DNA of 64,000 bases, taken from NCBI GenBank assembly GCA_053919585.1, contig CM132801.1. One strand, given 5' to 3'. Below the pieces are notes generated by a model. It did no database searches, had not been told where the DNA came from, and worked only from the letters and a program-made list of their open reading frames with translations. Source of the DNA: Euprymna scolopes. Lineage: Eukaryota. Numbering within the stretch: the first letter of the stretch is position 1; each line of letters starts with the position of its first letter. A program made the position numbers and the translations under genes. Below are positions 3,491 through 64,000 of this stretch, in pieces.

Positions 3491-4435
3491 CTTTTTTTAG
3501 TTTATGAATTTCTATTATGACTCCATTCTTTTTCTAAAAAATATATTTCATAGCATATTAAGTGTGTCTTATGCTGATAACATGCACTCATGAATAGCCT
3601 GTGGACAATTAATGACCTCTTTAAGCATTTGACTACGAATTAGTATAATAGAAGGGTAAAAAATGTTTGTTTAAATATTTTCAAACAACAAACCTTAATT
3701 CTAAAGTTTAATATTATTGGGATCCTTTCAATAATCTTTTGCATAAGAAACAGCTAATAATTAAGTTGCAATTTCCATCATCCACAGGATTGAAAATTCC
3801 TTACATTCATTGTTGTGTATTAAAGACTCCAGTCTGATTCATCACAGATCTCATCAGAAGACGACTTTGCATGTTAAGCAACACACTCAACAACATGACT
3901 GCACGTATAGTTCTTAGGCTTGTAACAGTTTGATGAAAAACATGTAGAGTTAGTATATCTGAAACCATAGGATGAACAACTTTCCACTGAGACAGACCTA
4001 CATGCCCATATACCTAAAGTTACTGCTCTTTCAGATTTCTTCAAAAATCATTCTTGGAGCTTTTACTTAGGTTAAATTTTGATAGCAAATTGAACTTCCT
4101 CTCTAAAAACTAAAATAAATTTGTGGCAGGCTTGAAGGTCAAATTAATTTATATCTTAAAAAAAAAAAAAAAAAATTAATGCTATACATTGAGACTGGCA
4201 TGTATGATGTAATTGTAAAACAATAAACCATTAAAAAAATCCATATTTGAATGATTGAACGTTTTCTGAATTGGTCATTTTTAATCACGGTTTCATATGG
4301 CTTCATAAAAATACAATAAATGAAGAAAATGCAATTATTATTCGTGTCTGTATTTCCAGTATTAAAAAACAAATCCTTTTCAAATAAAATGATTTTTACG
4401 ATTTCTGCATACATAAATTATACAAGTTCTCTTTT

Positions 4436-15590: not shown

Positions 15591-15639
15591 TAAAATTCTA
15601 TTTTAAAACAATAAACCTTATTCAGAATTTGTAAATATC

Positions 15640-16095
15640 GTCGGACTAAAAAATTCTGGTGCTTGTATAGAATTTCCCTTGTATTAACAATCAAAATAAA
15701 AGGAAAATCTGCATGATGTAAGGATTCGTGCCTGAAAGAAAATATTGTACACCAAAATCTCATAAATGGATCAATGCCATCTTGAAAACAAGGGAAATAA
15801 CTCCAAATAATTCAAATGTGTAAGATTTTAGAAAGCCATTTTTAATATAGGAACATTGGAAAAATTCAAATTTGTTTTAAAATGGTTTTCGGTACTTTTG
15901 CATTACACAGACAGTGCCATTTTTTTTGCGTTTTTCACTAAACTGTCACCACATAGTGCTTTTCAACTCAATTCAAAAGTGATAAGTTAACCCAGTTCAT
16001 TCATTTCATACCATTCAAATTGTTTAATAATTTAAAAATTAAAACTATAATATATAACATATATAACTTTGTTGACCCTTCAACGGGTCCACAAA
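15640..16095 (+). mobile_element. Merlin (IS1016-like) transposase remnant
   Basis: NFVDPSTGPQ at ~16065-16094 matches the Merlin motif NFVDPxTGxHTQ. The rest is heavily decayed. Confidence 0.4.
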
Positions 16096-28162: not shown

Positions 28163-29824
28163 CACAGGTGACAAAAAGAAAGTCTGCACTTGTCATTTTT
28201 TCAAAAACTGCAAATTTAAGCTAAATTTAATGTAACTGTTTAAACAAAATATACCTCATTTGATTCACCTTTTATTCTTCGATAATTTGACCTGTTCATA
28301 TTTGACTTTTAATTGAAATATTCTAGAGTTCATGTCAATTTAAAAAAATGATACCAAATTGAGGAGGCAAAAAGAAAGTCCGCACAATGGAAAATTGTTA
28401 TTTAAATGTAACCTTAGGACATTAATGCAACACAAATACAACAAGAACACGATAAACTAATTAATATTTAGTAGCATAGCTCTTCTGCAATTTGACAGCC
28501 TGCAATTTTGGGAGAATTCCTTGAATTATACTGCAGCAATACTCCGGGAAAAGGGCATCCCACTTTTCCTTAATTTTTGTCAAAAGTACTTCCAAATTCG
28601 AAATTTTAACATTGTGTAGCTGTTGTTTTATGTAATGTTATATGTTTTCGAAAGGATTGAGGTTTGGAGATTGTGCAGGCCAATCCAAACACGGAATATC
28701 ATGCTCTTCCAGGAACCTCTTGACATTGCCAGCTGTGTGAATGAGAGCATTATGCTGCATGAAGATGGGATTATCCAAATTCCAATCAAAGTAGAGTAGA
28801 AAATGCACAGTCAACATATTAATATACTTGATCAAATTAATTCGACCTTGCAAGCAAACTATAGGCCATGGACCATTGGTACTAATAATGCCTCACACCA
28901 AAACTGAACCTCCACCTCTTACAGCGTTGAAACTGAACACCTGGGATTAAATTCTTCGTCTTTCCTCCGACGGACGTACTGCCTACCATCATTGCCTAGC
29001 CTATTGAACTTGCTTTCATCACTAAAAAGCACTTTTGACCAATATGAAGAGTCATTATCTCCATTGCATCTGACGATGTCCAGACGGCGCTTTCTGTTCT
29101 TTACAGAAATCATTGGCTTGTGTCTTGCAACATATCATCGCAAATTAAATTCCTTTAATTTGTTCTGGACAGTAGAAAGAGAGCACTTTTGAACATGATT
29201 GCACTGTTGTTGGATTTTGGGAGCTGTTTCAAATCTGTTTCTTAGGCTGCAGATCTTGATAGCATTGTGTTCCCTGTTAGAAGTAACTCTAGTACCCCCA
29301 GATTTAGGGGCATCACGAACACTGCCGGTGTTTTGGTACTTTTGTACAGTCTTTCGTACCATTTTCCTATCACATTTCAATCTGCGGCCGATTTCTCGAT
29401 TGGATAAACCAGAAAGGTGGAGATTAATGAGCTCCTTACGATCACTAAGAGAAAGTTGTGGCATATGGACTAAATGTTACGTTGTATAACCTGGAACAAC
29501 AACAACAATTATGATTAGAGATGCTTAGTTGCCTGTTGGTGGATATTTTAAACTAATTTAGGGACGATAATTAAGCTGGTTTTAAGCGAATTTATTGCTG
29601 CGAACTTTCTTTTTGCCTCCTCAATTTGAAGTTATTTTTTTAAATTGACGTGAACGCTAAAATATTTCAATTAAAAGTCAAATATGAACAGGTAAAATTA
29701 TAGAGGAATAAAAGGCGAATCAAATGAGATATAATAGATTGTTTACACATTTACATAAAATTTAGCTTAAATTTGCAGTTTTTGAAAAAATTACAAGTGC
29801 AGACTTTTTTTTTTGCCGGCACTG
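28163..29824 (-). mobile_element. Near full-length Tc1-family transposon with long IR/DR-type TIRs
   Basis: The ~230-bp TIRs each carry an outer and an inner aaaagaaagtc(t/c)gcac-like repeat, and the element is flanked by TA. Confidence 0.9.
28461..29464 (-). pseudogene. Tc1 transposase pseudogene
   Basis: Contains an N-terminal HTH (MPQLSLSDRKELINLH..SNREIGRRL), WSKVLFSDESKFN, MQHNALIH (second catalytic Asp changed to His), WPAQSPNLNPFENI and a terminal YATKY*. Broken by stops and frameshifts. Confidence 0.9.
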
Positions 29825-35960: not shown

Positions 35961-36557
35961 TAAGCAGAAGGTATTTGATTATTTTCTGAATCATTTTCAA
36001 AACATTTTAAAGATTTCATTGAATTTCTACAATGTTGCTGTTAGATTCTACTTCAGTTCTAACACTATGAATTTTAGCTGAAAAAATTCGTTTATCAAAA
36101 ATGAATAGCGAGCTATTATTAGCTATTTTAACATTTTATGGTCATTGAAAGAGTTGACTTTAATATCACTTAAAGTATGGATTGATTTGCCACAAAAACA
36201 ATGCAATTAAATCTGTATGCCATTTTAACGACAAACAAAACAAAAAAAAATCAATTATTTGGAAAAATATTTTATTCTAAGAAAAAACGAACTTACTTTA
36301 TTAAAAAAATCTTTGAATTTTATTCTGAATTCCAATTAAAAAAAATCTCTTGGCTGAAATCTTTATAACGAACAAGAAAAGCAAATCCATTCTTTTCCTA
36401 AAGTATGCATTTTTTTTTTTTTTTAAATCAATTCTTTCCCTCCAATATTGTACAAGCTGCTGTTTTTTGTTTTTTTTTTTGTTTTTTTTTTTTGTTTTTT
36501 TTTTTTTTGTTCCTTAATTTGCATTTTAGTTTGTACCACTGCTCCCTTATTTTCCAG

Positions 36558-37344
36558 CCCCTCCTCCCCCCGGCAAGTCGTCGTCGTCGTCAGCCAATGG
36601 CTAGTGGCTCTTCTCCGTGTGGCGAGGAGGAGGGGGAGCAGGTGCACCACCTCCCCAGCACACACACGCCTGACGTGACCACTGAACCAACTTGCATTAC
36701 CACCAGTTTCTCCTTGTCAAGTGACTCCATTTCAAAACAAACTGACGATGTAAAAACCGCCGACGAATCCTGGACAATTGTCGAGGTTGAACACGAGCAA
36801 ACATCTAGTTTACAGCCTGTTGAGACGCTCAACACACAAACAATTTTCCCGCCAGTAAAGACAATGCCTCATCGAACAAAATCAAACAAGTTACCAAAGC
36901 CGAGTGCAGCAGTTTCTCCAATAAAACGCTCTCCATCTGAATCTAACATTAGAAAACGAAATTCACCCAGAGAAGACGACTCTGTATTTTGCAATAGCTC
37001 ATCTAGTCGAAACCTACACGAAACCCACAGTCCCATGTCACGGGAGGCATATTCTGATGTAAACTTAACTGAACCATATCCTAACTTGGACGCCAGTAGT
37101 CCTTGTGCAGATTCCAAAGACTCAGAACCGTCAATATTCAGAAAAATGAGCTCCAGTCTCAAAGCTATAACCCACAAGGTGAAAGGCAATTGGCTAGAAG
37201 TAGCACATGACCCTCATAAATATAGGCCCCCTCGACGGTTTGGCGATGTCGGGAAGGTTGATGTAATTGATCTAACGAAGGAAAATGAATCATCCTACAA
37301 AAGGCATATGAGCAGAAGTGAAATATTCAAGGGACTTTTTGTAG
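36558..37344 (+). CDS. STXBP5: Tomosyn large alternative exon B (787 nt, phase 0 in, phase 1 out), Ser/Pro-rich disordered loop
   Basis: Splice sites are cccttattttccag|CCC CTC and GTA G|gtatgt. It has 262 open codons in a GC/CpG-rich island with no TE motifs, and its phases bridge exon A and exon D. Confidence 0.75.
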
Positions 37345-37716
37345 GTATGTTGTAAAATATAGTTAAACTTAAAGGTTACAAAATTTTTGTGCTTGCTAAA
37401 ATGTACTCACCGCTTTAACTTTCCTCCTTTTTTCAGGGTGAGAGCGCCACCTATTGCTTGCCATAGCAAGAATTGCGATAAGTCTAACCACTCTTCTAAT
37501 CCTAGTCTATTTGTACTCATAGCACTAACGGCCTTAGACTGCATGCAGGCATCTATTCCCCACCCCCGTCCACCCCCACCCCCACTGGCAGGTGAACGTT
37601 TGCTTCCATAGCAGCTGTTGGTAGTCGATGCATGTACCTGCTTTTCCACTGACCATCTTTATCAATATCTTTTTGTAGTGATTCAGTTTTGAGCTGACTG
37701 TGATTTTTGCCCTCAG

Positions 37717-37797
37717 ATAAGCCACACATAGACAGCTATATTACTATGAAACAGCAGATTCAACACCAACAACAGCACACTTCATATTTTCTCAGAG
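37717..37797 (+). CDS. STXBP5: Candidate 81-nt cassette exon, phase 1-1: (D)KPHIDSYITMKQQIQHQQQHTSYFLR
   Basis: A ctgac branch point precedes the tttttgccctcag acceptor. Only phase 1 is open. The donor GAG|gttgtt is weak. Confidence 0.3.
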
Positions 37798-38880: not shown

Positions 38881-40135
38881 AATAAAGTACAATGGCTATG
38901 GTAGGCAGTTGAAAGTCAATAGTAGATAATTATGTTAATTTTTTTTTTTCTTTGTAAATCAATTCACTATCATATCATAATGGTATTATAAACTCTTAAT
39001 CCCACAGATTTCAATGAATTGATTTGTATAGATTTAACAAGAAATTGACTGCTCAACAAATAAACTTAAGTCTTTGAAATTTGCAGTTTAAATAATACTT
39101 GATTTGAAATATCACAAAGTGATATTTCCAGCTTTCATATTATTTAAGCTGCAAATTAATATTAAAAAGCAACGAACCATTAGTGGTGTACACTGATGGT
39201 TAATGCATACTTTGGTTAATTTTGATGTTAATATTTTAATTCATGATATGACATAATCATGTAGAACATGACAAGAACTTTCTTATAAACCATTGCATTT
39301 AAATTTCTTGGAAAGAATAATTAGTTAATTTGGGGGGAGGTACTTGTCTGGTTTGATATTTTTATCTTCATCTAAATTGGTCTCTTATGTATGAATAAAA
39401 GTTTGGAAGTATGAAACCATTCATGTGCAATAATTCCTGCTTATTCATTGACATTGCAATTAACATTAGAGATAATTAACCGTTTTTAGATCAATATTCT
39501 GGTCACTATACTTATACACTTGTGTAGTGCTTATTTTATATCATAATTAATGCAATTTACTGCCATTAATTAAATATTAAATACACCAAAGCTTTAAAGT
39601 ATTCATCCATTTTAAATTAGTGTTAATGTAATCCTCTTTTGTAAAGTCTTATTTGCTTCACACAACTTGAAAGATAATTTGTGTAAAAGACAAAAAATAT
39701 ATGTATTATTTAGCAAATGACCATTTTCAGCTTGGTTGTGCATTTTTTCAAGCTTGGCCATTTTTATGTTGAATTTTGAAAAAATTCAATTTTGACAGAA
39801 TTCCCCAAATTTGAAACTAAACACCTGAAAAAAGTCGAAAGTTACCTTTGCTGAAATACTAAGAATCTAACAACCTAGACGAGAAATAGTCGGAATAATC
39901 CAAATAATCCAAATTCTTGTCTCAAACATCCTGAAATGCAAAATAAATAAACTATCAAGTGGTGATAGTTGTTCTATGTTTGGCTTATCAAAAAATGGTG
40001 ATGGTACTGCTGATGCTGCTGCTGGTGGTGATGATGATGATGATGGGTTTCAATGTTTAGAATTGACTAATCCAGGGTTTTGAACATGACGGCTTTCATT
40101 AATGCCTTGCTTGATTTTTTTTTACTTGATTCTAG

Positions 40136-40280
40136 ATAGATGCCGCTTCTCCCAGTCCCAGCCCAAAACAAAAGAAACAGCACCCGCACCCAGAGCTGAA
40201 GCGGACAAAGTCGCAGGCGGCTACCCGCAAAATTCAGAAGGCTCAAAGCAACGCATCATTGGAGGATAATAATGGAGGAG
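40136..40280 (+). CDS. STXBP5: Tomosyn alternative exon C (145 nt phase 0->1, or 141 nt from 40140 phase 1->1): IDAASPSPSPKQKKQHPHPELKRTKSQAATRKIQKAQSNASLEDNNGG
   Basis: Tandem acceptors tttacttgattctag|atag|AT and donor GAG|gtgcta bound a GC-rich open frame. LKRTKSQ..RKIQKAQS recalls invertebrate tomosyn loop sequence. Confidence 0.72.
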
Positions 40281-44939: not shown

Positions 44940-45270
44940 CAACATCGTCCTTGTATATATGTCCATTGATGTCATTAATAGAAACAAAAGGCTACATTGG
45001 TATGGACACATGGAATGCTTAAGTGGTGCCATCAAGATAGCTCAAGATTTGGAAATCTCCAGTTGGCTGAGAAGCTGTCCTAAATTGTCTTTGAAAGAAC
45101 TGCTGAGAGAAATCACATGGTGTGCAAACTCTCTGAAGTTGATCCTCATGATCGTTTTTTTTTTTTTTATTAACATGTGGAGATGTGGAGTGAAATTTGC
45201 CATGTAAGCAGACACCCAGCTACCTGGACGGGGACCCATCAGTGTGGATGATTCCCCTCAAACAGCACGT
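44940..45270 (+). mobile_element. RTE-like LINE 3' fragment
   Basis: RNKRLHWYGHME...RSCPKLSLKE resembles RLRWYGHVxR...RGRPKxTW. Confidence 0.6.
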
Positions 45271-49690: not shown

Positions 49691-52119
49691 ACTTAAAAAA
49701 AAAATACACTCCATTAAAAATCGTTCCTCAAAATAACTAGATTCGGCATTAAATATTCATATAACCTGAAAAAGGTTGATATGCCTAAAACAACCAACCA
49801 ACCAACCAAGGTCAAAAGCCACTCGAGGATAAAGGTTAATGATTATCAGTTGGATGATGAACAATTTTATAAAAGAATTGAAAATGATGAAAGGAATGAA
49901 CAAAATTCGATTACTTTGATAGTTTGACAAGTATTTGTTTACATTGGATTTGATGATGACCATAGTTTAGTCTGCAAGGAAACAATTCTGTGACAACATC
50001 TTCTAAAGAAAATGTGCACGGAAATTCTACTTTGTTTTGAATACAGAGGAAGAAAGGAAAGTTCTTTGCAATGATGGTAGAAAGATAAGTTCTTGCTATG
50101 AATGTTTTGCTGAAAGAAACCAGGAATTGGCGCTCTGTTGAGCACTTACTGTGAAAATAACGAGAGTAGGAAAAAAGAAAAAATTAGCAAGATTGATTTT
50201 CTGTGTGAAATCGCCTGTAGAGAAGAGATCATCTGCAAGTAGATTGTAACTAAATTATTTCTTGGTCACACGTTTTAGTCAGTCAAAACAGCAGGCTTAT
50301 AATAATTGTGTGTTACATCAGTCAATGACTATGTCACCTCTTAAAGCTGAGTGCAATATTTTATAGATGTAATTATCAAAGTTCTGTCATTGTTCATTGA
50401 TGAAAACTCAGTTTAGATTTTGTCGTGAAAGGGTTTTAAAATAAATGTTTTAAGGAACTTTTTCTAGTCATTTTGTTTGTTATCAATATTTCAAAAGATT
50501 TCATGCTTATAAATTACAAAGGAAAATTTTTGATTTATGAATTATTACAAAATTTTATTTACAATGTTCATATTAAGTTGACAGAATTTGATCCTTCAGA
50601 AGTTATGGCTCAAAAGATGACAGATCCTACATAATTCGTATTTGGTTTAGAAAAATTCAAGTTTTGAAATATTCAGAAAAACGGAAGTATGTAGCAAATT
50701 TTATAGTCAACAGTTAAGGGAAAACAAATAAGATTATCATTTTTTTTTTTTTTTTTTTGTGTGTCAGTTGTGAACAAAGTGATTCTCGTCTTTGATTTGA
50801 GAATGGGAGGATTTATCTGTGTTCTTTCTCTTTTGGCTCTTTGTTATGGCAAGGACATGTTTGGAAATAAAGGTTTTCCTTTGATTTTAGAAGTACAAAT
50901 GGATCAAAATATTTTACTTTGTTTACCTTTCAAATGTTAGAGTCAGAAATAATGTTCTATTGGACATTTAGAATCATTTAGAAAAATTTTTTTTTTTTTG
51001 TATTTAAGAAGCAAACATCATTGTACAGTTTAATCCATTATCAATTCAGTAAATTAATATACAAAATTATTACCATCTTACCACCATCATCACCAACAAC
51101 AACCACCCATGGCGCCTTTTTGATGTCCATGTGTCTAACATATGCTGATATGTTTACAAAGTCAGAAAGTAGTACATCTTGTATAAAGTTTGGAAACATT
51201 TTGTCAGGCCTATAATTGCTGAAATATGGAGCAACTCGCCTACATCGGTTGTTGGCTGCTGAGGCACTGCATCCTTTAAAACCCTTATGATATTCAGAAA
51301 TTTGAAAAAACTACACCTGATGCACACACACGCTCTTCGTGCACATGCAGACATGTGCATGTGTTTTTGATGAATTGTAGTGCTGTGCACTGTGCACAAT
51401 GATTTCATTATGTAAAAAAAAAAAAAAAATGGCTGGTGAGGTATTTATATACTGACTGCAAAATTCAAAAATAATTTTGAAGCCTTCAAACTGATGATTA
51501 GAAATTTACAAGTAATTCCTGACTTTAATTGAATTTAACATATTATGCTGCTTCATTTGTGTTCAAAAACCAAAGGGGAATGTTGATTTCCCAACATTTC
51601 CCTGCCATATCAAATATATTTTTCTTGTTGTTCTTGTTAATTTTTCTTCGTTTTAATCTTTTCTTTTTTTTTTTTCTTTTCATCTTTGCATCAGAAATAT
51701 CTCTGAAATATTTGATGCATGTGTGCTAAGTTTTGTTTGGTCTTGGCCATCTTCATTTTTCTTATTTATTTTATTTTTTTTTTCTCATTCATCAGCATGA
51801 GACCAAAGATTGCTGCTGCTTAGCAGCTCAAAACTGTCAACGGTTATCTCCCCTTTTTAGACTTTTCAGGTGTTATTCTACCCATCTTGGCATCTTCTCA
51901 AGAATGCATTTTGCCCATTTAGTGCTGTCTTGTGTATTGCATCTTTTATTGTAAGATTTGGATTCAAAGAGATGATGGTGTTGTTTTCCAAAATTCAAAC
52001 CATTTCTGCTCTTTTTGCAATTTTCTAAAATCCAAACTTAACCCATTGCATTTCCTATTCGTAAACTTTTCATTTTTTTTTTTTTTTTTTTTTTCAACTT
52101 GTTCATCTGCTTTCTGTAG

Positions 52120-52128
52120 GACACTCAA
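52120..52128 (+). CDS. STXBP5: Candidate 9-nt neural-type microexon (GACACTCAA)
   Basis: A long poly-T tract leads to ctgctttctgtag|GACACTCAA|gtaagt. The donor is perfect, UGC lies near the 3' splice site, and the exon preserves frame. Confidence 0.55.
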
Positions 52129-52666
52129 GTAAGTGAATTCTACTCCCCATTTATTAAACTTTTCCTCTTCCTTTTTCTCCTTATTGTAATTGTCGTATTT
52201 TGGTGACATTCCCTACCTTAGTTAGAATCTACATAGGATTAGAAGCTTTTGGAATTGAGAGGCTTGCACAACACTGAGCCCCATTTTTTTTTTTTTTTTT
52301 TTTTTTTCATCTCTTTATGGGATGTATTTCTAAAAAACAATCCAGATGTTAAAAATTGATCTAGTCACATGATTCTCAATGAATCTTACTTTGAGACATG
52401 ACAAATACATTTAGTGTTGTTATAAATAAAAAAAAAAATAAAAAAACTGCTGGAATGCAGACCTAGGTCACTATATTTTCGAAATAAGCTAAATCCAGGT
52501 GATTTTACATTGACTGAAATTAAATTGAGGTAACAGCATCTTAGCTGAATTTGTGTTGAGGCAATTATAACTCAACTGAAGCCAGATTAGAGTGAAAATA
52601 CTTTGATGGGAATCGGGTTGAAACGATGGTACTTGATTTAAGCCAGGACAAACTAGGATGGTGGGT

Positions 52667-52914
52667 GTGGCTCTATCTTGACTGAATCCGAACTGGTTGT
52701 GGCTCTACCTTGACTGAATCCGAACTGGTTGTGGCTCTACCTTGACTGAATCCGGACTGGTTGTGGCTCTACCTTGACTGAATCCGGACTGGTTGTGGCT
52801 CTACCTTGACTGAATCCGGACTGGTTGTGGCTCTACCTTGACTGAATCCGGACTGGTTGTGGCTCTACCTTGACTGAATCCGGACTGGTTGTGGCTCTAC
52901 CTTGACTGAATCCA
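52667..52914. repeat. 32-bp minisatellite, ~7.7 copies (gtggctctaccttgactgaatccg(a/g)actggtt)
   Basis: Read directly; degenerate units continue to ~52470 and ~53070. Confidence 0.95.
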
Positions 52915-54074: not shown

Positions 54075-56130
54075 GGGAAAAATCTTGCGTGTAATAGGTC
54101 TTATTCCATTCATGCTTTTTCAATACAATATTTACCTTCATTCAGGTAAGTAAAAAAAGTGTTGTTATTAATTTGGTTACCATATTACACAAAAATAACC
54201 TAAAATTAGTAAGAGCTACAGGAAAGACCCCTCGCCCCCCCCCCCACCAAAAAAAAAAGTCAAATTTATGAGAGAAAGAAAAAGTTTTATTCAAGTTGTT
54301 AAATCAGTTTCTCTTCCTTCAATTTTTCCGTTTTCCTTTTTGCTCTAATTTTCCCTTATTCATGTGTTATGCTGTCACTGAATTAATAATCTTTTAATCT
54401 TGACTTTTGCATACCTGATGGTGTAAATTGTATTGGAATGTAATTTGGATTGAATAAAACCTATTTCACATAAGCGAATGTTTTCCAGTCACTATTTAGA
54501 TAATACTGTCGAATATGTTTTCCCTATTAATGCTTGTGTATGTTGAATACCTTTATGAATGAGTTTGTGGATCCGCTTTGTCCTGTAGCACATGCTTTGT
54601 ATTTGAATTCGACATTTTTCACTTTACCTTTTCTTTGATGTGAAGTTTCTTAGAGAGTTAGAACTGTGAATTCTATTCGTCTTAATTGCACAAGAAGAGT
54701 AGTAATAATAAAAAAAAAACTCTACGATTACATCACCATTTTTATTTAATAGTGTACCCATACTGTCAAAAATGACATTTTTTTTTCATTGTTTCCCAAT
54801 TTACGTAAAGCTTTCAGAATTAAAATCACTTGGTAAAAGAAGTTGTCAATGCATTGACGACTCCTACAATACTATTTCAGTTAGCTACTGTTGATCCCTG
54901 AATATATAGATCTGAAGTGAGAATTTTGCGTTTCTATTATACCATCAATATATAACAACACTTTATAGTCGTGTATATCTGACGTGTTAGAATGACGTAG
55001 AAAAGATATTTTCCATTTTGAAATTATATTACATCTAGAAAACTTCTGTTGGAAATTTAGCAAACATGTTTGAGAAAATTACGACACTGAGAGTCGAGAA
55101 TGACACCTGGTAAAGCGCCAATAAAATATTTCTATTTGGATTGCGTTTGTAAGAAGGGACGAATGTGTTTCAGAGTTCTCATCATTCTATCACAAGGCAG
55201 AAAGGAAGATGCAATATTTCCCTGTTACATGAAAAGGAATCAATATTTATAGATATTGAAACATACACAATGCATGTAATATTAGAGATTATGGTTTGTT
55301 TGAGCAGCTCTTATTTTAATCAGTCTCATTTACACTTATGTTTGTGTGTGTTCATGCTTTGAAGAGATTCGTCACAAGCTTGAGAACAAAACTCTGACCC
55401 AGGGGTTGGTTGTTTTGTTGTCATCACATGGGTTGTTTAGCAAGTTATATGAAAGTACTTTCTAAAGTCGTCTTCAGAGCTGGGTAAAGTCTTCCCTGTT
55501 GTAGTCTTCATGCTGTTGAAAGATTCATATGAAACAAGACTCCGTTGTAGTCAGGATTTGTATCAATGTAAGTAATCTCAGCCCTGATAATCGTATCTAA
55601 GGCTTGACTTTATCTTCCATACTATCCACAAATGTGGGAATGGGGTAGATCACGTCTCTGTCTGACTCGCAGGCTTTGTAGTTTTGTTTTGCTATGTGCA
55701 CAGGAGGTCATCCTTCAAGGCATTATCTTCTCGTTTCTAGAGTGACAAAATGATTACATACTTCAGGAAAAAAAGCTTGCATATCAGTTTAGGTAGAAAG
55801 GAAAGCAAATACATATTATCTAAATATTAACAGACATGTTTCATTTTTTTTTTTTTTATGACTCTTCAGTGTGGTTTTATGTAGTAACCTAAAAACCTAA
55901 AAGTTCGAACCCAGACTCTGCTCTGACTGCAAAAGTTTAAATAGAATAGAATTGGATTGGTTTAAGGCAATATCTTTCCCCACTTAAAATAGTGCCATGC
56001 TTAGTCATTGCTTGAAAGTGTCTAAAAATTATTCATTTTCACAATGCAAATTTACAGCCATTGTGTGTTTGAGATTATACAGCGTCTTTTTTTTCAATAT
56101 TTTCGTGAATAAGATATTTCTTCATTGATT

Positions 56131-56420
56131 AGTATCATAATCACGTTGACACACCGGTTCCCGTCAGATCACCGAAGTTAAGCAACGTTGAGCCTGGTTA
56201 GTACCAGATAGGTGACCATTTGGGAATTCTAGGTGCTGTATGCGCTTTCCACTTATCTCTGCATTGTTTCCAGTCATCTTGAACCTCCACATGCCACTGG
56301 TATTCAACAGTGTCGACTTAAGGGAGGTGTGGTTGGGGATTGCGCAACTCTTGCCACAAAAATTTCATGCATAGACACCCTTACCATGGGTATCCATAGT
56401 CTGTCAAGACTGAAGGAAGC
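56131..56420 (+). mobile_element. 5S rRNA-derived SINE (SINE3-like) or 5S pseudogene with body
   Basis: 56131-56248 (tcacgttgacacaccggttcccgtcagatcaccgaagttaagcaacgttgagcctggttagtac..gggaattctaggtgctgta) is an invertebrate 5S sequence with substitutions and a small deletion. A GC-richer body follows. Confidence 0.75.
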
Positions 56421-58719: not shown

Positions 58720-59340
58720 GTGTGTATGCATGTAAGTGTGATGTATGTATGTGTAACTACATCTATGGTGATGTATGTATGTGTAACTACATCTATGGTG
58801 ATGTATGTATGTGTAACTACATCTATGGTGATGTATGTATGTGTAACTACATCTATGGTGATGTATGTATGTATGTGTAACTACATCTATGGTGATGTAT
58901 GTATGTATGTGTAACTACATCTATGGTGATGTATGTATGTATGTATAACTACATCTATGGTGATGTATGTATGTATAACTACATCTATGGTGATGTATGT
59001 ATGTATGTATANNNNNNNNNNNNNNNNNNNNNNNNNNNNNNNNNNNNNNNNNNNNNNNNNNNNNNNNNNNNNNNNNNNNNNNNNNNNNNNNNNNNNNNNN
59101 NNNNNNNNNNNNNNNNNNNNNNNNNNNNNNNNNNNNNNNNNNNNNNNNATGTATGTATGTATGTATAACTACATCTATGGTGATGTATGTATGTATAACT
59201 ACATCTATGGTGATGTATGTATGTATGTATAACTACATCTATGGTGATGTATGTATGTATAACTACATCTATGGTGATGTATGTATGTATAACTACATCT
59301 ATGTTGATGTATGTATGTATGTGTAACTGCATCTATGATG
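58720..59340. repeat. Compound minisatellite aactacatctatggtg(atgt)n, spanning an assembly gap
   Basis: Read directly; units vary by ATGT copy number. Confidence 0.95.
59012..59148. other. Assembly gap (N run)
   Basis: Run of N. Confidence 1.
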
Positions 59341-62016
59341 ACTCAAATAAACTTTTTCTTTATTGGCACTTTAAAAAAAAGTACCAAAAGATTAACAGAT
59401 TAAACATGAAGAGTTGTACGCCACTTGCAGCTGACCAATTCCTACCCTTTGCTTTGAGATACGATCCTGTGGAACAATGATTTGTGGATACTTGTTATCT
59501 TAGCCCATCATTCTATCTCAAGATATACACTTTTCGTTGTTTAAATACTTAAATCAAGAAAAATGTGCTACACAACAACAACGAGCTGAAGCAAGTTTGG
59601 GTCTTGCATTGAGTAATTGAGAATTAAAAGAATGTAATAAACGCCCAACAGTTATTATCTGGTGGTGAGGTGTAATTTTTTTTCTGCTCAGTTATCATAT
59701 CTATCAGGGTCCAAACGTTCGGTTAAATAAATCTGTGCTTAGTATGACACGCATCTGCATCCAATAGTGTACATATGTATTTGAATCTATTAACAGATAT
59801 TATTATATACTGTGTATAGTCATAAGAGAGCAAAGAAAAGTGATCTTGATTAAAAGGATTGAATGTATTAAAAATGTATACAATAACAGAGAATGTGTTC
59901 TTTGAATTAGAAGGTTTTGGGGGAGGCGGTGTGCAAATAAGCTTGCCTGCCTATAGGAGAACAAGGCCAAGTTACTTGTTGGTTGAGTAAAGTAGGTCTA
60001 TGGGCTGACATTGTTGATGACATTTTATGTCTTGCAGCTGAGTTTCTGTTTGAGGCTGGAAGGAAAGTGGATTTGGTTTGAAACCCTTTTTTATTAGAGA
60101 AAATCAGATCATCTCAACAATTTTTTGTGACATTCCGTTTTTCATGACAGGATGTCTTATCATTGGTTCTTAAATCAAATTATCTCTATTTATTTCAGAA
60201 CTGTAAGAGATGCACGGATCCCCTTCACAAAGAAACATTTTCTTATTTTTATTTGTCCTCTCTATCTATATTCAGTAAATTTATGTGTAGCCTTAATTTG
60301 AACGAAATCTAATTTGAGCAGACTATAACATTAATGACTTGAAGTCATCAAGGATTTCTACCAGAACAATTGAACTCGATTTAAATATCCATCCAGTGCA
60401 GCCGTAGCCAAGATTAAACTCACTACACGAGTTTGTAGTGTAATTCAAATCTTGTCGGTGGCTGAATACTTGCTGCTTTGCCAGGGCTATCAAGGGTATT
60501 TTTTATCGTGATGCCATCACTAGACGGTGTGTCTACCATGGCTTAAGAGAGTCCCATCTACCCCTGAGAAAAAAATACTGCACCAGTTTCTCAACCTGAT
60601 ATTGTACCTCGCGGTACATACAGCGCCTTGCCTAAATAACACTAGAGTGTTGAAATACTATAAAAAAAAAAAAACAACCTTTACACTTCTGCAGTTTAGT
60701 ACCTTAAACAGTCTCAGAAAGACAAGAGCCATTATTAGTTTGTGACTAATGCAGTTGTTTTCTTAAAAAAATTGTTCAATTTTTGTGATAATTATAGCTT
60801 TGACATTTTTTCCTTCAGACATTATGCTCCATGGTACATGGTCATCACTTTTTATTCATTTGGTATTCTGTTTGTAAACACGTATCATCCACGTCCTCAC
60901 AAAATTGCATACACATTGATATTATAGTCAGATTCACTTAGAGTTTTAATGAATGTTACAAAATCATGTTGTTTCTTTGTTATTCGTCTTCTTTTTATTT
61001 GTTTACATGTAATTCTAGTATTGCCGTTATATGTCGGTACACCATAAGATTTAAACGAACATATTCTTTTTGTTATATGAAAAATTAAAATAGTTATTTC
61101 CATAGTAGGTGCTCAACTGATCTCCAATTTCTGATAACTACTTTCCCAACCCCCATTCCCAAACTTTTGCAGCAAGAATTTGTTTTCTTACCATCAATTT
61201 AAAAACTTTTTCTTCCTGTATGTACCTAAAACCAAACGGAAATTCTATTAACATAGTTTCTTTCCAAAGAGTTCCCATATGTGTAACACATTACCTTAGA
61301 ACAACTTCTTTACAGACTTCAACATGATCATTTTCAAGTCTTATGTTAAAGACTTATCAAGGTATTCTCTTAAGTAGTTAGTTTGTTAGTTCTAACCAAT
61401 TTTTTTTCTGTTTTTTTATGGTGTTGTTCATTGTACATCTCAATAACCCTTACCCTTAAGTGGCTTTTAACCTTGATAAGTGATGGATAATTAGTATAAA
61501 AATAATTGTTACAAATGTAAAAAAAAATTTTTTTCTGAATAGTTATTTTATTTGACGACTTTTCAAAGTTCGTTCAACTCATATGGTGTATCTACAAATA
61601 AAAACAATTAAAAAAAATATTATTTTCATTAAAAATTTTATTTTATGTCAATTCAAAAGTTCATTGTTTTGTACATTTCATTTCTCTGTGCAGTCAGTGT
61701 CTTAAACTGTTTGTGGGTTCGGTTTCACCTAAAATGCTTTTTTTATGATGCAGAATTTTTTTGAAAATGTCCACCTCTTATGTTTATAATATTTTGAATT
61801 TATAAAAAAATTGTCAACTTTTTCTTTTTCTTTTTTCTTTTTTATTTGATAAAAGAAAATCTTGTTTTACTCAATTTCTTTGTTTTTTTATTTTGTTTCC
61901 TTTTTGTTTTATTTAATCAGCTTGTTCTCATCATGTGAAACAAAAATTTAGAAACAATTTACAAAATGTGATATTGGTAAGAGTTCGTCTGATTCTGAGA
62001 TTTGTTATTCTTACAG

Positions 62017-62136
62017 ATAAAAATGATGGCACGTCATTTTCACGATCAAGAAGTTCAAGCATGTCCAGTCTTGAGAATGTCTCCAAGGAAGCGATCCAGT
62101 GCTTGAAATTTGCAGATTCTTACACAAGAAAAACAG
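62017..62136 (+). CDS. STXBP5: Tomosyn exon D (120 nt, phase 1-1): (D)KNDGTSFSRSRSSSMSSLENVSKEAIQCLKFADSYTRKT
   Basis: Splice sites are tttgttattcttacag|AT and ACA G|gtttct. The peptide matches the tomosyn signature SFSRSRSSSVTSIDKESREAISALHFCETFTRKT. Confidence 0.93.
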
Positions 62137-62378
62137 GTTTCTGTTTTGAAATTATCGTAATTTCATATCCAATCATAAAACTATTAATCAGTCTATGTGG
62201 TTGAATCAATAATACTTGTTAGCAGTTTCTCATTGCACATTCATCAGGTCTGATGCATAGAAAGAACACTAAGTTACAATGTGCCATTGAATCCATGTCT
62301 ACACTTTTATCACTTAAGTTGATATCCTCTCTCTGATATTAAGCCTTTATAAATATAACAACTAATACAACTACATAC

Positions 62379-62425
<47 letters not shown>

Positions 62426-63680
62426 ATGTATCAATAAAATAAGAAAATAATATAAAAATATATACTGATGTTTATAGATTTATTCATGTATTCAATAAGG
62501 ATGATACATCAATTAGGGGTGTAGGATAAGTAAGAACTGTTTATACCATGGTATTCCGAAGCCTAATGCTTCTCGTCAGAAGAGAAGATGCTAGATAAAA
62601 TAAAAGAGATGCAACGTCTATTGATAGTTACATTAGGAGCAAAGTAATTGTGCAGTGAGGAAAAAAATATTGAAACTATTTGGGGGTGGGAGAACTAAAG
62701 TGATCTCTGTGATATAGGAAAAGAAAACCAGTTTTTTGCTGGTATATATTTGCATTTTGTATAATTCTGGTCTTCTCTTCTTCTGATGAGAAACCTTTCA
62801 CTTCGAAATGCTATGAAGTTTTTTTTGTTTTGTTTTTTTCTTAAATTTCCCTTTAACTTTTTTTTCCCTTTATTTTTCTGATATAATAAAGTTATATATA
62901 ACTTTTATCCGTCATCTTTCATTGTAATATGTGCATGTATGCATTAAAACAGTTTGCACAAATTAACTCAAGCATTTTTGGAGTTACAACAGCAATAAAT
63001 AAAATTGCCAGAAAAAATTTCAAAGACATGGATATCAGAGTCAGCAAATCTATGACGGTGTTCTTCCCAACTATAAATGCAGGGGTGGTGAAGAGGTGAA
63101 AGCTTTTTAAACATGTCAAATTTAATCCATCACCAATTAGGGTAATTTTACATCCACACAACTATTTACTATGTTTTTTTTTGTTGTTTTTTTGTTTTTT
63201 TAGATATTTAGAGTCACATATTAACTTGTTAGCTTAATATAATTACAATAAGCAAAGGATTAAAAATGATAATAGTTGTATACTAAGTTGGAAAGCTTTT
63301 TATTATGTGATACCAGGTCGTTAAGGTTTCTTTATGGAATGGCATGGTAAATTCCCCTTTCGTTAACATATTTATCTAGGATAAACAGTTTGAAGTGTCT
63401 ACAGCTAATACCTATTTCATTTCTTTGATATAGTAGTTTATTTGCATTGAGAAATGTAATAATTATAGTTATTCTTTCATTAAGATAAAACAAGTGAGGT
63501 TGTGTAGTGTGGGAGTTAAAGCTTTCTTCAGGATGCTCCATTTTAGTACAGGTATCTTATTTTTCTTTAGAGATCATATGTTTAGGATAATGAGATGATC
63601 ACCTTTCTAATACATGTTATTGAAATGATCTCTGTATCTAGCTTTAAAGTCAATACTTTTTTTCTACCTATATATATAAG

Positions 63681-63710
63681 TACTAGCAAAAGTACTCATC
63701 GTTGACTGGG
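63681..63710 (-). mobile_element. Helitron/Helentron-like terminal motif (opposite-orientation copy at ~365-393)
   Basis: cctgggcaacattgggtttctctgctagta at 365-393 has a reverse-complement-like counterpart tactagcaaaagtactcatcgttgactggg. Both show a hairpin plus CTAGT end. Confidence 0.35.
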
Positions 63711-64000
63711 TTCAAAAACAGCCTAATGGACTCTGATTTATTAAAGTATGATAGGTTATCAAAAGGAAGGGTTGTAAATTTGGGTTGAATTTGGGGGTAT
63801 CAAAACCAAAGCAAAATATGATGAAAGTAAAAATAAAATAGATAAACCCCATAATTTATTATACCGTACCTGTTCACACTGAAACATTTATCACAGTATT
63901 CTGTGGATCTATATTAAAAAACCTTGTTAAACTTTGTGACATATTTTCATTCTATGGAGGTCAGGTGTGAACGAACACCCCATAATTTTATTATACCATA

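What the first reader, a model, noticed from the sequence alone, without database searches (positions are those of the whole stretch)
52030..52134. Textbook 9-nt neural microexon candidate
It has an extended AG-free region with a cttaac branch-like site, long poly-U, UGC about 10 nt before the AG and a perfect GTAAGT donor. This matches the Srrm3/4 (eMIC) target architecture. In phase 1 it changes NNGG-D-KND to NNGG-GHSN-KND next to the SRSRSSS phospho-cluster; in phase 0 it reads DTQ.
Basis: partly seen in the sequence, partly recalled or inferred. Interest (0 to 1): 0.7.

Follow-up and report, generated by a model that had tools for sequence, protein, structure and literature searches.

The report
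Unconfirmed 9-base exon candidate in tomosyn
In a long intron of a cephalopod tomosyn gene, which makes a brake on synaptic vesicle release, there is a 9-base stretch with near-perfect splice signals; I found no RNA, protein or cross-species evidence that it is ever spliced in, so it is more likely an unused look-alike than a real nerve-specific mini-exon.

Summary
GACACTCAA (52120-52128) follows a 146-nt AG-free zone that holds CTTAAC, a T22 run and a TGC 7 nt before the AG. A GTAAGT donor follows it. It keeps the reading frame, changing NNGG-D-KND to NNGG-GHSN-KND. It is the only such site on either strand of the window; chance expectation is roughly 0.003-0.06.

The gene is tomosyn/STXBP5. 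The candidate lies 11.8 kb into the 21.7-kb intron before the very conserved exon D (FSRSRSSS motif).

I found nothing showing that it is used:
- The only spliced transcript recovered across this junction joins the 787-nt exon directly to exon D.
- The two raw RNA runs barely cover the gene.
- None of 263 fetched homologues carries the insert.
- Two other invertebrate genomes have no counterpart. One instead has a 33-nt VIYLKPDSCSS exon, which matches annotated bivalve isoforms.
- Poly-T runs are common on this strand.

In favour, this junction carries small alternative inserts in beetles, bivalves and vertebrates.

Verdict: observation confirmed, interpretation undecided. I put a real microexon at about 0.3 and an unused or noise-level pseudo-exon at about 0.6.

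The parts
51972..52117 (+). AG-free (AG exclusion) zone of 146 nt upstream of the candidate acceptor
   Evidence: 16 gaps of 140 nt or more exist on this strand of the window
52037..52042 (+). CTTAAC branch-point-like motif (TTAAC fits yUnAy), about 78 nt before the AG
   Evidence: a motif match only
52073..52094 (+). T22 homopolymer serving as a possible polypyrimidine tract
   Evidence: one of 26 T runs of 12 or more on the + strand
52108..52110 (+). TGC (UGC) motif, 7 nt before the acceptor AG
52118..52119 (+). candidate acceptor AG (tgtAG|G)
52120..52128 (+). candidate 9-nt exon GACACTCAA; in phase 1 it turns D into GHSN
   Evidence: no RNA or protein support found
52129..52134 (+). consensus donor GTAAGT
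   Evidence: 13 GTAAGT on the + strand of the window
40136..40280 (+). upstream coding exon C (tandem acceptors give a start at 40136 or 40140); ends ...SLEDNNGG in phase 1; weak donor GTGCTA
   Evidence: homologous exon in Pomacea, Gigantopelta and Mytilus isoforms and in L003
62017..62136 (+). downstream coding exon D, (D)KNDGTSFSRSRSSSMSSLENVSKEAIQCLKFADSYTRKT, phase 1 to 1
   Evidence: conserved in 95 representative proteins; covered by a spliced RNA contig
36558..37344 (+). 787-nt alternative exon whose end is joined directly to exon D in run X2, skipping exon C and the candidate

Best explanation
The 9-nt segment is most likely a pseudo-exon: a splice-site look-alike that is not used, or used only at noise level. 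The sense strand of this tomosyn intron is T-rich and full of poly-T runs. One T22 run happens to be followed by the first AG after 146 nt and, 9 nt later, by a consensus GTAAGT. The run may be the tail of an antisense retroposon, or a microsatellite. A 9-nt exon is too short for ordinary exon definition. Without a dedicated activator, the spliceosome removes the whole 21.7-kb intron and joins exon C, or the 787-nt exon, straight to exon D. The motifs, and the direct join in one transcript, are shown. That the site is not used in every tissue is inferred.
For: The only spliced record across the junction, an X2 contig of 3037 nt at depth 24.5, joins the end of the 787-nt exon directly to 62017. 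No loose end carrying the 9 nt was listed. None of 263 fetched tomosyn homologues or fragments has GHSN or any similar insert at the junction. The complete homologous intron in L003 (2.35 kb) has no microexon-like site. The L002/L006 genome has a different small exon there, 33 nt long and reading VIYLKPDSCSS. Poly-T runs followed closely by an AG are common: 21 on this strand, and a second one is also followed by a GTRAG donor. So genome-wide, chance sites of this type should outnumber real microexons of this type. The tract is a perfect homopolymer and lacks the UCUC half of the bipartite enhancer (10.1101/2024.09.17.613571).
Against: The full combination is unique in 128 kb of strand sequence, with a chance expectation of about 0.003-0.06 for this intron. 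It is in frame and on the sense strand. It sits in a synaptic gene, exactly at a junction that carries small alternative inserts in other animals. Its donor is far stronger than those of the real neighbouring exons (GTATGT, GTGCTA, GTTTCT). The RNA test was weak: tissues are unknown, depth on exon D in the raw runs was 0-2, and contigs drop rare variants.
Confidence: 0.6

Rival explanations
1. It is a real, lineage-specific neural microexon of the eMIC (Srrm234) type. In neurons, Srrm234 would bind near the UGC just upstream of the AG and help early spliceosome assembly on a distal branch point. The 9 nt would then be included, giving a tomosyn isoform with GHSN instead of D directly before the conserved FSRSRSSS serine cluster of the linker.
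For: The architecture matches published eMIC features: AG exclusion zone, UGC near the 3' splice site, CUAAY-like branch site and strong 5' splice site (PMC8797185; 10.1101/2024.09.17.613571). The pattern is statistically unusual and preserves the frame. The same junction carries +GRV in Nicrophorus isoforms, +AIVYLKPDC in Mytilus, VVYLKPDSSAS in Mercenaria and a 17-residue exon in vertebrates. The tomosyn variable region is a known site of alternative splicing, SUMOylation and PKA phosphorylation (PMC3188574; PMC2171531). Recurrent evolution of distinct neural exons in orthologous genes has been reported (10.64898/2026.09.05.749416).
Against: No read, contig or protein shows inclusion. No conservation was found. 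The tract is a pure T22 without UCUC. The 3' splice region is strong rather than weak. The three-residue peptide has no recognisable function.
Confidence: 0.3
2. It is a young exonisation-prone site made by an antisense retroposon. The roughly 190 nt between the two poly-T runs (52095-52284) would be a SINE-like insert on the minus strand, whose poly-A tail supplies the T22 tract, as in Alu exonisation. Inclusion would be rare and probably not regulated.
For: The T22 and T24 runs bracket a unit of about 190 nt. T runs are three times more frequent on the sense strand than on the antisense strand. That bias is expected if antisense retroposon tails accumulate in introns; this last step is inference.
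Against: No second copy of the unit is in the window. No tRNA-like or Rfam match was found at 51600-52700. No repeat library was available.
Confidence: 0.07
3. It is a splicing intermediate site that helps remove the long intron in two steps (recursive or nested splicing) and never appears in mature mRNA.
For: It lies near the middle of a 21.7-kb intron (11.8 kb in), and exon C has a weak donor.
Against: Recursive sites need AG directly followed by GTRAGT, so that a donor is rebuilt after the first step. Here AG is followed by GACACT, so joining exon C to 52120 rebuilds no donor.
Confidence: 0.03

Closest known systems
SRRM3/SRRM4 (eMIC, Srrm234)-dependent neural microexons
   Same: Length of 9 nt and frame-preserving. 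Long AG exclusion zone, UGC a few nt before the AG, branch-like CUUAAC far upstream and a consensus donor. The host gene is a synaptic vesicle-fusion regulator.
   Different: Inclusion, neural specificity, regulator dependence and conservation are all unshown. The tract is a U22 homopolymer without UCUC motifs, and the region next to the AG is pyrimidine-rich, so the 3' splice site is strong rather than weak.
Alternative small exons of the tomosyn variable region at the same junction (mollusc YLKPD-type 27-33-nt exon; vertebrate 17-residue exon of m-/b-tomosyn; insect +GRV)
   Same: The same position in the protein, directly before the (D)K-x-D-x-SFSRSRSSS exon, with the same phase 1 on both sides and a small in-frame insert.
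   Different: There is no sequence similarity to any of them. The YLKPD-type exon found in L002 and annotated in bivalves is not recognisable in this window. The insect insert is encoded directly next to exon D in genomic open reading frames, so it is probably an alternative acceptor rather than a separate exon.
Pseudo-exons and Alu-type exonisation sites (an antisense retroposon tail acting as polypyrimidine tract)
   Same: A homopolymer T tract about 23 nt before an AG, deep in a long intron, with a nearby donor-like site and no evidence of use.
   Different: No repeat family could be assigned to the flanking sequence. The donor is a perfect consensus and the frame is preserved, which is not typical of random pseudo-exons.
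Recursive splice sites (ratchet points, RS exons)
   Same: A strong acceptor and a strong donor close together in the middle of a very long intron.
   Different: The acceptor is not directly followed by GT, so no donor is regenerated.

Membership tests
eMIC (Srrm3/4/234)-dependent neural microexon | Exon of 3-27 nt that keeps the reading frame | tested here: met
   9 nt; phase 1 to 1; D becomes GHSN with no stop
eMIC (Srrm3/4/234)-dependent neural microexon | UGC motif between the polypyrimidine tract or branch point and the AG, close to the 3' splice site | tested here: met
   TGC at 52108-52110, 7 nt before the AG. About 36% of acceptor-like sites in the window also have one.
eMIC (Srrm3/4/234)-dependent neural microexon | Long AG exclusion zone with a distal branch point | tested here: met
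   146 nt AG-free; TTAAC about 78 nt upstream. 16 such gaps occur on this strand.
eMIC (Srrm3/4/234)-dependent neural microexon | UCUC-rich half of the bipartite intronic enhancer (UCUCUC-N1-50-UGC) | tested here: not met
   The tract is a pure T22 followed by CAACTTGTTCATC, with no alternating UCUC (feature from 10.1101/2024.09.17.613571 and PMC8797185)
eMIC (Srrm3/4/234)-dependent neural microexon | Inclusion in mature mRNA | tested here: inconclusive
   One spliced contig skips it. The raw runs have depth 0-2 on exon D, and no loose end with the 9 nt was listed. The joined-form search was left out by rule.
eMIC (Srrm3/4/234)-dependent neural microexon | Neural-specific inclusion | not testable with these tools
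   The tissues of the runs are coded or unknown, and the single read-laying run was used
eMIC (Srrm3/4/234)-dependent neural microexon | Dependence on the eMIC domain of Srrm234 | not testable with these tools
   Needs knock-down or minigene experiments
eMIC (Srrm3/4/234)-dependent neural microexon | Conservation of the exon and its flanking intron in related species | tested here: inconclusive
   There is no counterpart in L003 (whole intron) or in 18 kb of L006, but both are distant. The closest relative, L001, does not reach the site.
Tomosyn YLKPD-type microexon (bivalve isoforms, L002 genome) | Encodes x-V/I-Y-L-K-P-D... in phase 1 directly before exon D | tested here: not met
   The candidate encodes GHS(N). 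No YLKPD-type exon with splice sites is in the window.
Recursive splice site | Acceptor AG immediately followed by GTRAGT | tested here: not met
   AG|GACACT
Retroposon-derived exonisation site | Flanking sequence belongs to a repeat family, on the antisense strand, with its A-tail as the tract | tested here: inconclusive
   No second copy in the window; no Rfam or tRNA match; no genome-wide repeat library available

The most novel reading that the evidence does not exclude
A cephalopod-specific 9-nt neural microexon of the eMIC type has arisen in tomosyn at exactly the junction where other molluscs use a YLKPD-type microexon, insects a 9-nt acceptor shift and vertebrates a 17-residue exon. 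That would be recurrent, independent evolution of a tiny neuron-specific insert next to the invariant FSRSRSSS serine cluster of the linker. In rat, the linker lowers syntaxin-1 binding when phosphorylated by PKA.
Probability: 0.28. Interest if true: 0.5.

Novelty: not a real feature. Interest (0 to 1): 0.25.

Why it matters
Tomosyn is a decoy SNARE that limits vesicle priming, and its variable linker is where splicing, SUMOylation and PKA phosphorylation act (PMC3188574, PMC2171531). A neuron-specific 3-residue insert directly beside the most conserved serine cluster of that linker would be a neat example of recurrent microexon evolution at one protein position across phyla. It would also give a handle on linker function in cephalopod synapses. 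If the site is an unused look-alike, as I think more likely, the lesson is about method. In T-rich cephalopod introns, a poly-T run followed by AG and GTAAGT is not enough to call a microexon. The useful by-product is the cross-phylum map of small inserts at this tomosyn junction.

Tried and rejected
1. Reads. A 9-nt exon cannot be placed by itself, and the flanking exons lie more than 6 kb away. I therefore laid reads on exon D and read the loose ends. The only informative record was the X2 contig joining the 787-nt exon to exon D. Runs X23 and X24 were too shallow on this gene, and X5 was unspliced.

3. A protein word search with the 787-nt exon found only two genomic open reading frames of relatives.

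4. The big protein search with exon D and two further word searches fetched 263 proteins. None is a spliced product of this species, and none has the insert. Proteins of 438-769 residues were not covered by the word searches.

5. An exact look-up of ten window open reading frames in the 15-billion-protein collection found none.

6. A metagenome scan for the acceptor-exon-donor pattern gave 0 hits.

7. Walking a relative's contig (L002 to L006) reached 18 kb upstream of exon D without meeting exon C. I stopped there.

8. L004 and L005 are too short to reach the site.

9. I looked for a YLKPD-type exon in the window. The match at 61223 (MYLKPN) has neither AG nor GT, and the match at 3953 (VYLKP then a stop) has no donor and is out of order. 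Both were rejected.

10. The recursive-splicing reading was rejected on the motif.

11. The SINE idea found no tRNA, Rfam or in-window repeat support.

12. A literature search found no paper on tomosyn microexons.

Full report
**What is there**

- CTTAAC at 52037-52042.
- A T22 run at 52073-52094.
- TGC at 52108-52110.
- The first AG after a 146-nt AG-free stretch, at 52118-52119.
- Nine bases, GACACTCAA, at 52120-52128.
- GTAAGT at 52129-52134.

- Exon C ends ...AATAATGGAGGAG at 40280. It has tandem acceptors, giving a start at 40136 or 40140.
- Exon D is 62017-62136 and encodes (D)KNDGTSFSRSRSSSMSSLENVSKEAIQCLKFADSYTRKT.

Both junctions are in phase 1. Including the 9 nt changes NNGG-D-KND to NNGG-GHSN-KND, and in phase 0 the 9 nt read DTQ. 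The candidate lies 11.8 kb into a 21.7-kb intron.

**The gene**

Exon D matches 95 representative proteins. The full-length ones are named syntaxin-binding protein 5 or tomosyn by NCBI, in gastropods, bivalves, crustaceans and insects. Mapping two gastropod proteins back onto the window shows that it spans the whole variable loop. The span runs from the conserved exon at 1681-1806 (GSMDPYQRAPRSPR...) to exon D. Another note (s1-295508) says the genome is a cephalopod; I did not test that.

In mammals this variable region is where alternative exons, SUMOylation and PKA phosphorylation act. PKA phosphorylation of the linker lowers syntaxin-1 binding (PMC3188574; PMC2171531).

**Is the pattern more than chance?**

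I scanned both strands for AG, then 3-27 nt, then GTAAGT. There are 28 such pairs. Only this one has a pyrimidine-rich upstream 40 nt (0.85), a long AG-free zone and a nearby TGC.

The + strand has 11 strong acceptor-like AGs and 13 GTAAGT. This gives an expectation of about 0.06 for any length, 0.02 for lengths divisible by three, and 0.007 with a TGC. Markov simulations of the intron gave 0 of 400 for the strict pattern and 0.105 for a loose one.

The individual ingredients are nonetheless common here:
- 26 T runs of 12 or more lie on the + strand, against 9 on the other.
- 21 of those 26 are followed by an AG within 40 nt.
- A second one, at 45155, is also followed by a donor-like GTAAGC after 21 nt, with an in-frame stop.
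- 16 AG-free gaps of 140 nt or more lie on this strand.

Scaled to a cephalopod-sized genome, chance sites of this exact type should run to hundreds in sense-strand introns. That is more than the number of real microexons likely to have a homopolymer tract and a perfect donor. This scaling is my inference. The pattern is therefore a good lead but not proof.

**RNA evidence**

The run search listed 24 runs of the same organism with coded names and no tissue given.

I therefore laid four runs on 60000-64000 and read the loose ends at the exon D acceptor:
- Run X2 has a 3037-nt contig at depth 24.5 that covers exon D. Its preceding 30 letters are the end of the 787-nt exon (36558-37344). That transcript joins the 787-nt exon directly to exon D and skips both exon C and the candidate.
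- The raw poly-A runs X23 and X24 had depth 2 and 0 on exon D, too little to judge.
- The X5 contig there is unspliced.

No loose end containing the 9 nt was listed. This is weak negative evidence: the tissues are unknown, and contigs drop rare variants.

**Protein evidence**

No spliced protein of this species was in the collections. The 787-nt exon found only two genomic open reading frames of relatives. Ten open reading frames of the window are not in the collection. Among the 263 proteins fetched with exon D or its neighbourhood, none has GHSN or a similar insert at the junction.

The comparison did show that this junction is a hot spot for small inserts:
- Nicrophorus isoform X5 has +GRV relative to X6. 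In many insect genomic open reading frames GRV is contiguous with exon D, which suggests an acceptor 9 nt upstream.
- Mytilus isoforms carry +AIVYLKPDC.
- Mercenaria carries VVYLKPDSSAS.
- Vertebrates have a 17-residue exon ending ...LKPDL.

**Conservation**

Three lines of comparison were possible.

1. The closest relative I could reach is L001. It is 89% identical over the 787-nt exon and a few hundred flanking bases, and otherwise unalignable. Intronic conservation would therefore be informative, but its 6.6-kb contig does not reach the candidate.

2. Two more distant genomes were fetched through exon D open reading frames:
   - L003 holds exon C and exon D only 2.35 kb apart. The intron between them has no microexon-like site, even under relaxed criteria.
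   - L002, extended as L006, has no exon C within 18 kb upstream of exon D. It has no 9-nt look-alike either. It does have a 33-nt exon with a CAG acceptor and a GTAAGT donor, 2.65 kb before exon D. That exon encodes VIYLKPDSCSS in phase 1, clearly the same exon as in the bivalve isoforms.

3. The present window has no such YLKPD-type exon with splice sites.

So the candidate is not an ancient conserved exon. If it is real, it is lineage-specific.

**Comparison with the known class**

Published eMIC targets have long AG exclusion zones, UGC close to the 3' splice site and CUAAY-type branch sites. They also have polypyrimidine tracts enriched in UCUC and, in mammals, strong donors (PMC8797185; 10.1101/2024.09.17.613571).

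The candidate meets the first three and the strong donor. Its tract, however, is a perfect T22 homopolymer without UCUC, and the last 20 nt before the AG are already pyrimidine-rich. A perfect homopolymer looks young, like a retroposon tail or a microsatellite, rather than long selected.

The stretch between the T22 and a T24 run 190 nt downstream could be an antisense SINE. I found no second copy in the window, no tRNA-like head and no Rfam match. A recursive splice site is excluded, because the AG is not followed by GT.

**Verdict**

- The interpretation cannot be decided with the data available here.

The evidence for a real microexon is the unusual motif combination, the preserved frame, the synaptic gene and the hot-spot junction. 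The evidence against is the genome-wide base rate of such sites, the skipping transcript, the absence from all fetched proteins, the lack of conservation and the homopolymer tract.

My estimates:

| Reading | Probability |
|---|---|
| Unused or noise-level pseudo-exon | about 0.6 |
| Real, probably lineage-specific, neural microexon | about 0.3 |
| Retroposon exonisation or other readings | about 0.1 |

A few hundred junction reads from neural RNA-seq, or an RT-PCR, would settle it.

Noticed in passing
window 56128-56244 (+): A full-length match to 5S ribosomal RNA (Rfam RF00001, 66 bits, E 2e-12) inside the same tomosyn intron. It could be a dispersed 5S copy, a pseudogene or a 5S-derived SINE head.
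   Followed up: no
L002 7421-7453 (= L006 about 15612-15644): In another invertebrate genome (ENA ERZ25069870) a 33-nt exon with a CAG acceptor and a GTAAGT donor lies 2.65 kb before the exon D homologue. It encodes VIYLKPDSCSS in phase 1, matching annotated bivalve isoforms (Mercenaria VVYLKPDSSAS, Mytilus AIVYLKPDC) and recalling the ...LKPDL end of the vertebrate 17-residue exon.
   Followed up: partly
window 3953-3967 (+): An open frame reads ...LVYLKP followed by a stop. It resembles the YLKPD-type microexon but has no donor, a poor acceptor context and the wrong order in the gene. It is either chance or a decayed relic.
   Followed up: partly
window 45183-45203 (+): A second poly-T + AG + donor-like site: T14, AG 12 nt later, 21 nt, then GTAAGC. 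It has an in-frame TGA in phase 1. It shows how easily such look-alikes arise here.
   Followed up: no
window 40130-40142 (+): Exon C has two acceptors 4 nt apart (TAG-A-TAG), giving 145-nt or 141-nt forms that both end in phase 1. In run X2 the 787-nt exon skips exon C altogether.
   Followed up: partly
window 63750-64000, 60402-60535, 62546-62679: Very high read and contig depth with many mismatches in all four runs, on both strands. These are most likely copies of abundant repeats or abundant RNAs rather than tomosyn exons.
   Followed up: no
window 52662-52913 and 58738-59341: A 32-nt tandem repeat (7.9 copies, 98% alike) lies 530 nt downstream of the candidate. A 30-nt minisatellite is interrupted by the run of N.
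   Followed up: no
window 28641-29464 (-): A remnant of a Tc1/mariner-type transposase, with helix-turn-helix and DDE_3 Pfam matches, in pieces.
   Followed up: partly
window 36351-36557 and 37345-37741: The intron flanks of the 787-nt alternative exon are conserved at about 89% with the closest relative (L001), while the rest of the intron is unalignable. This is typical of a regulated alternative exon.
   Followed up: no
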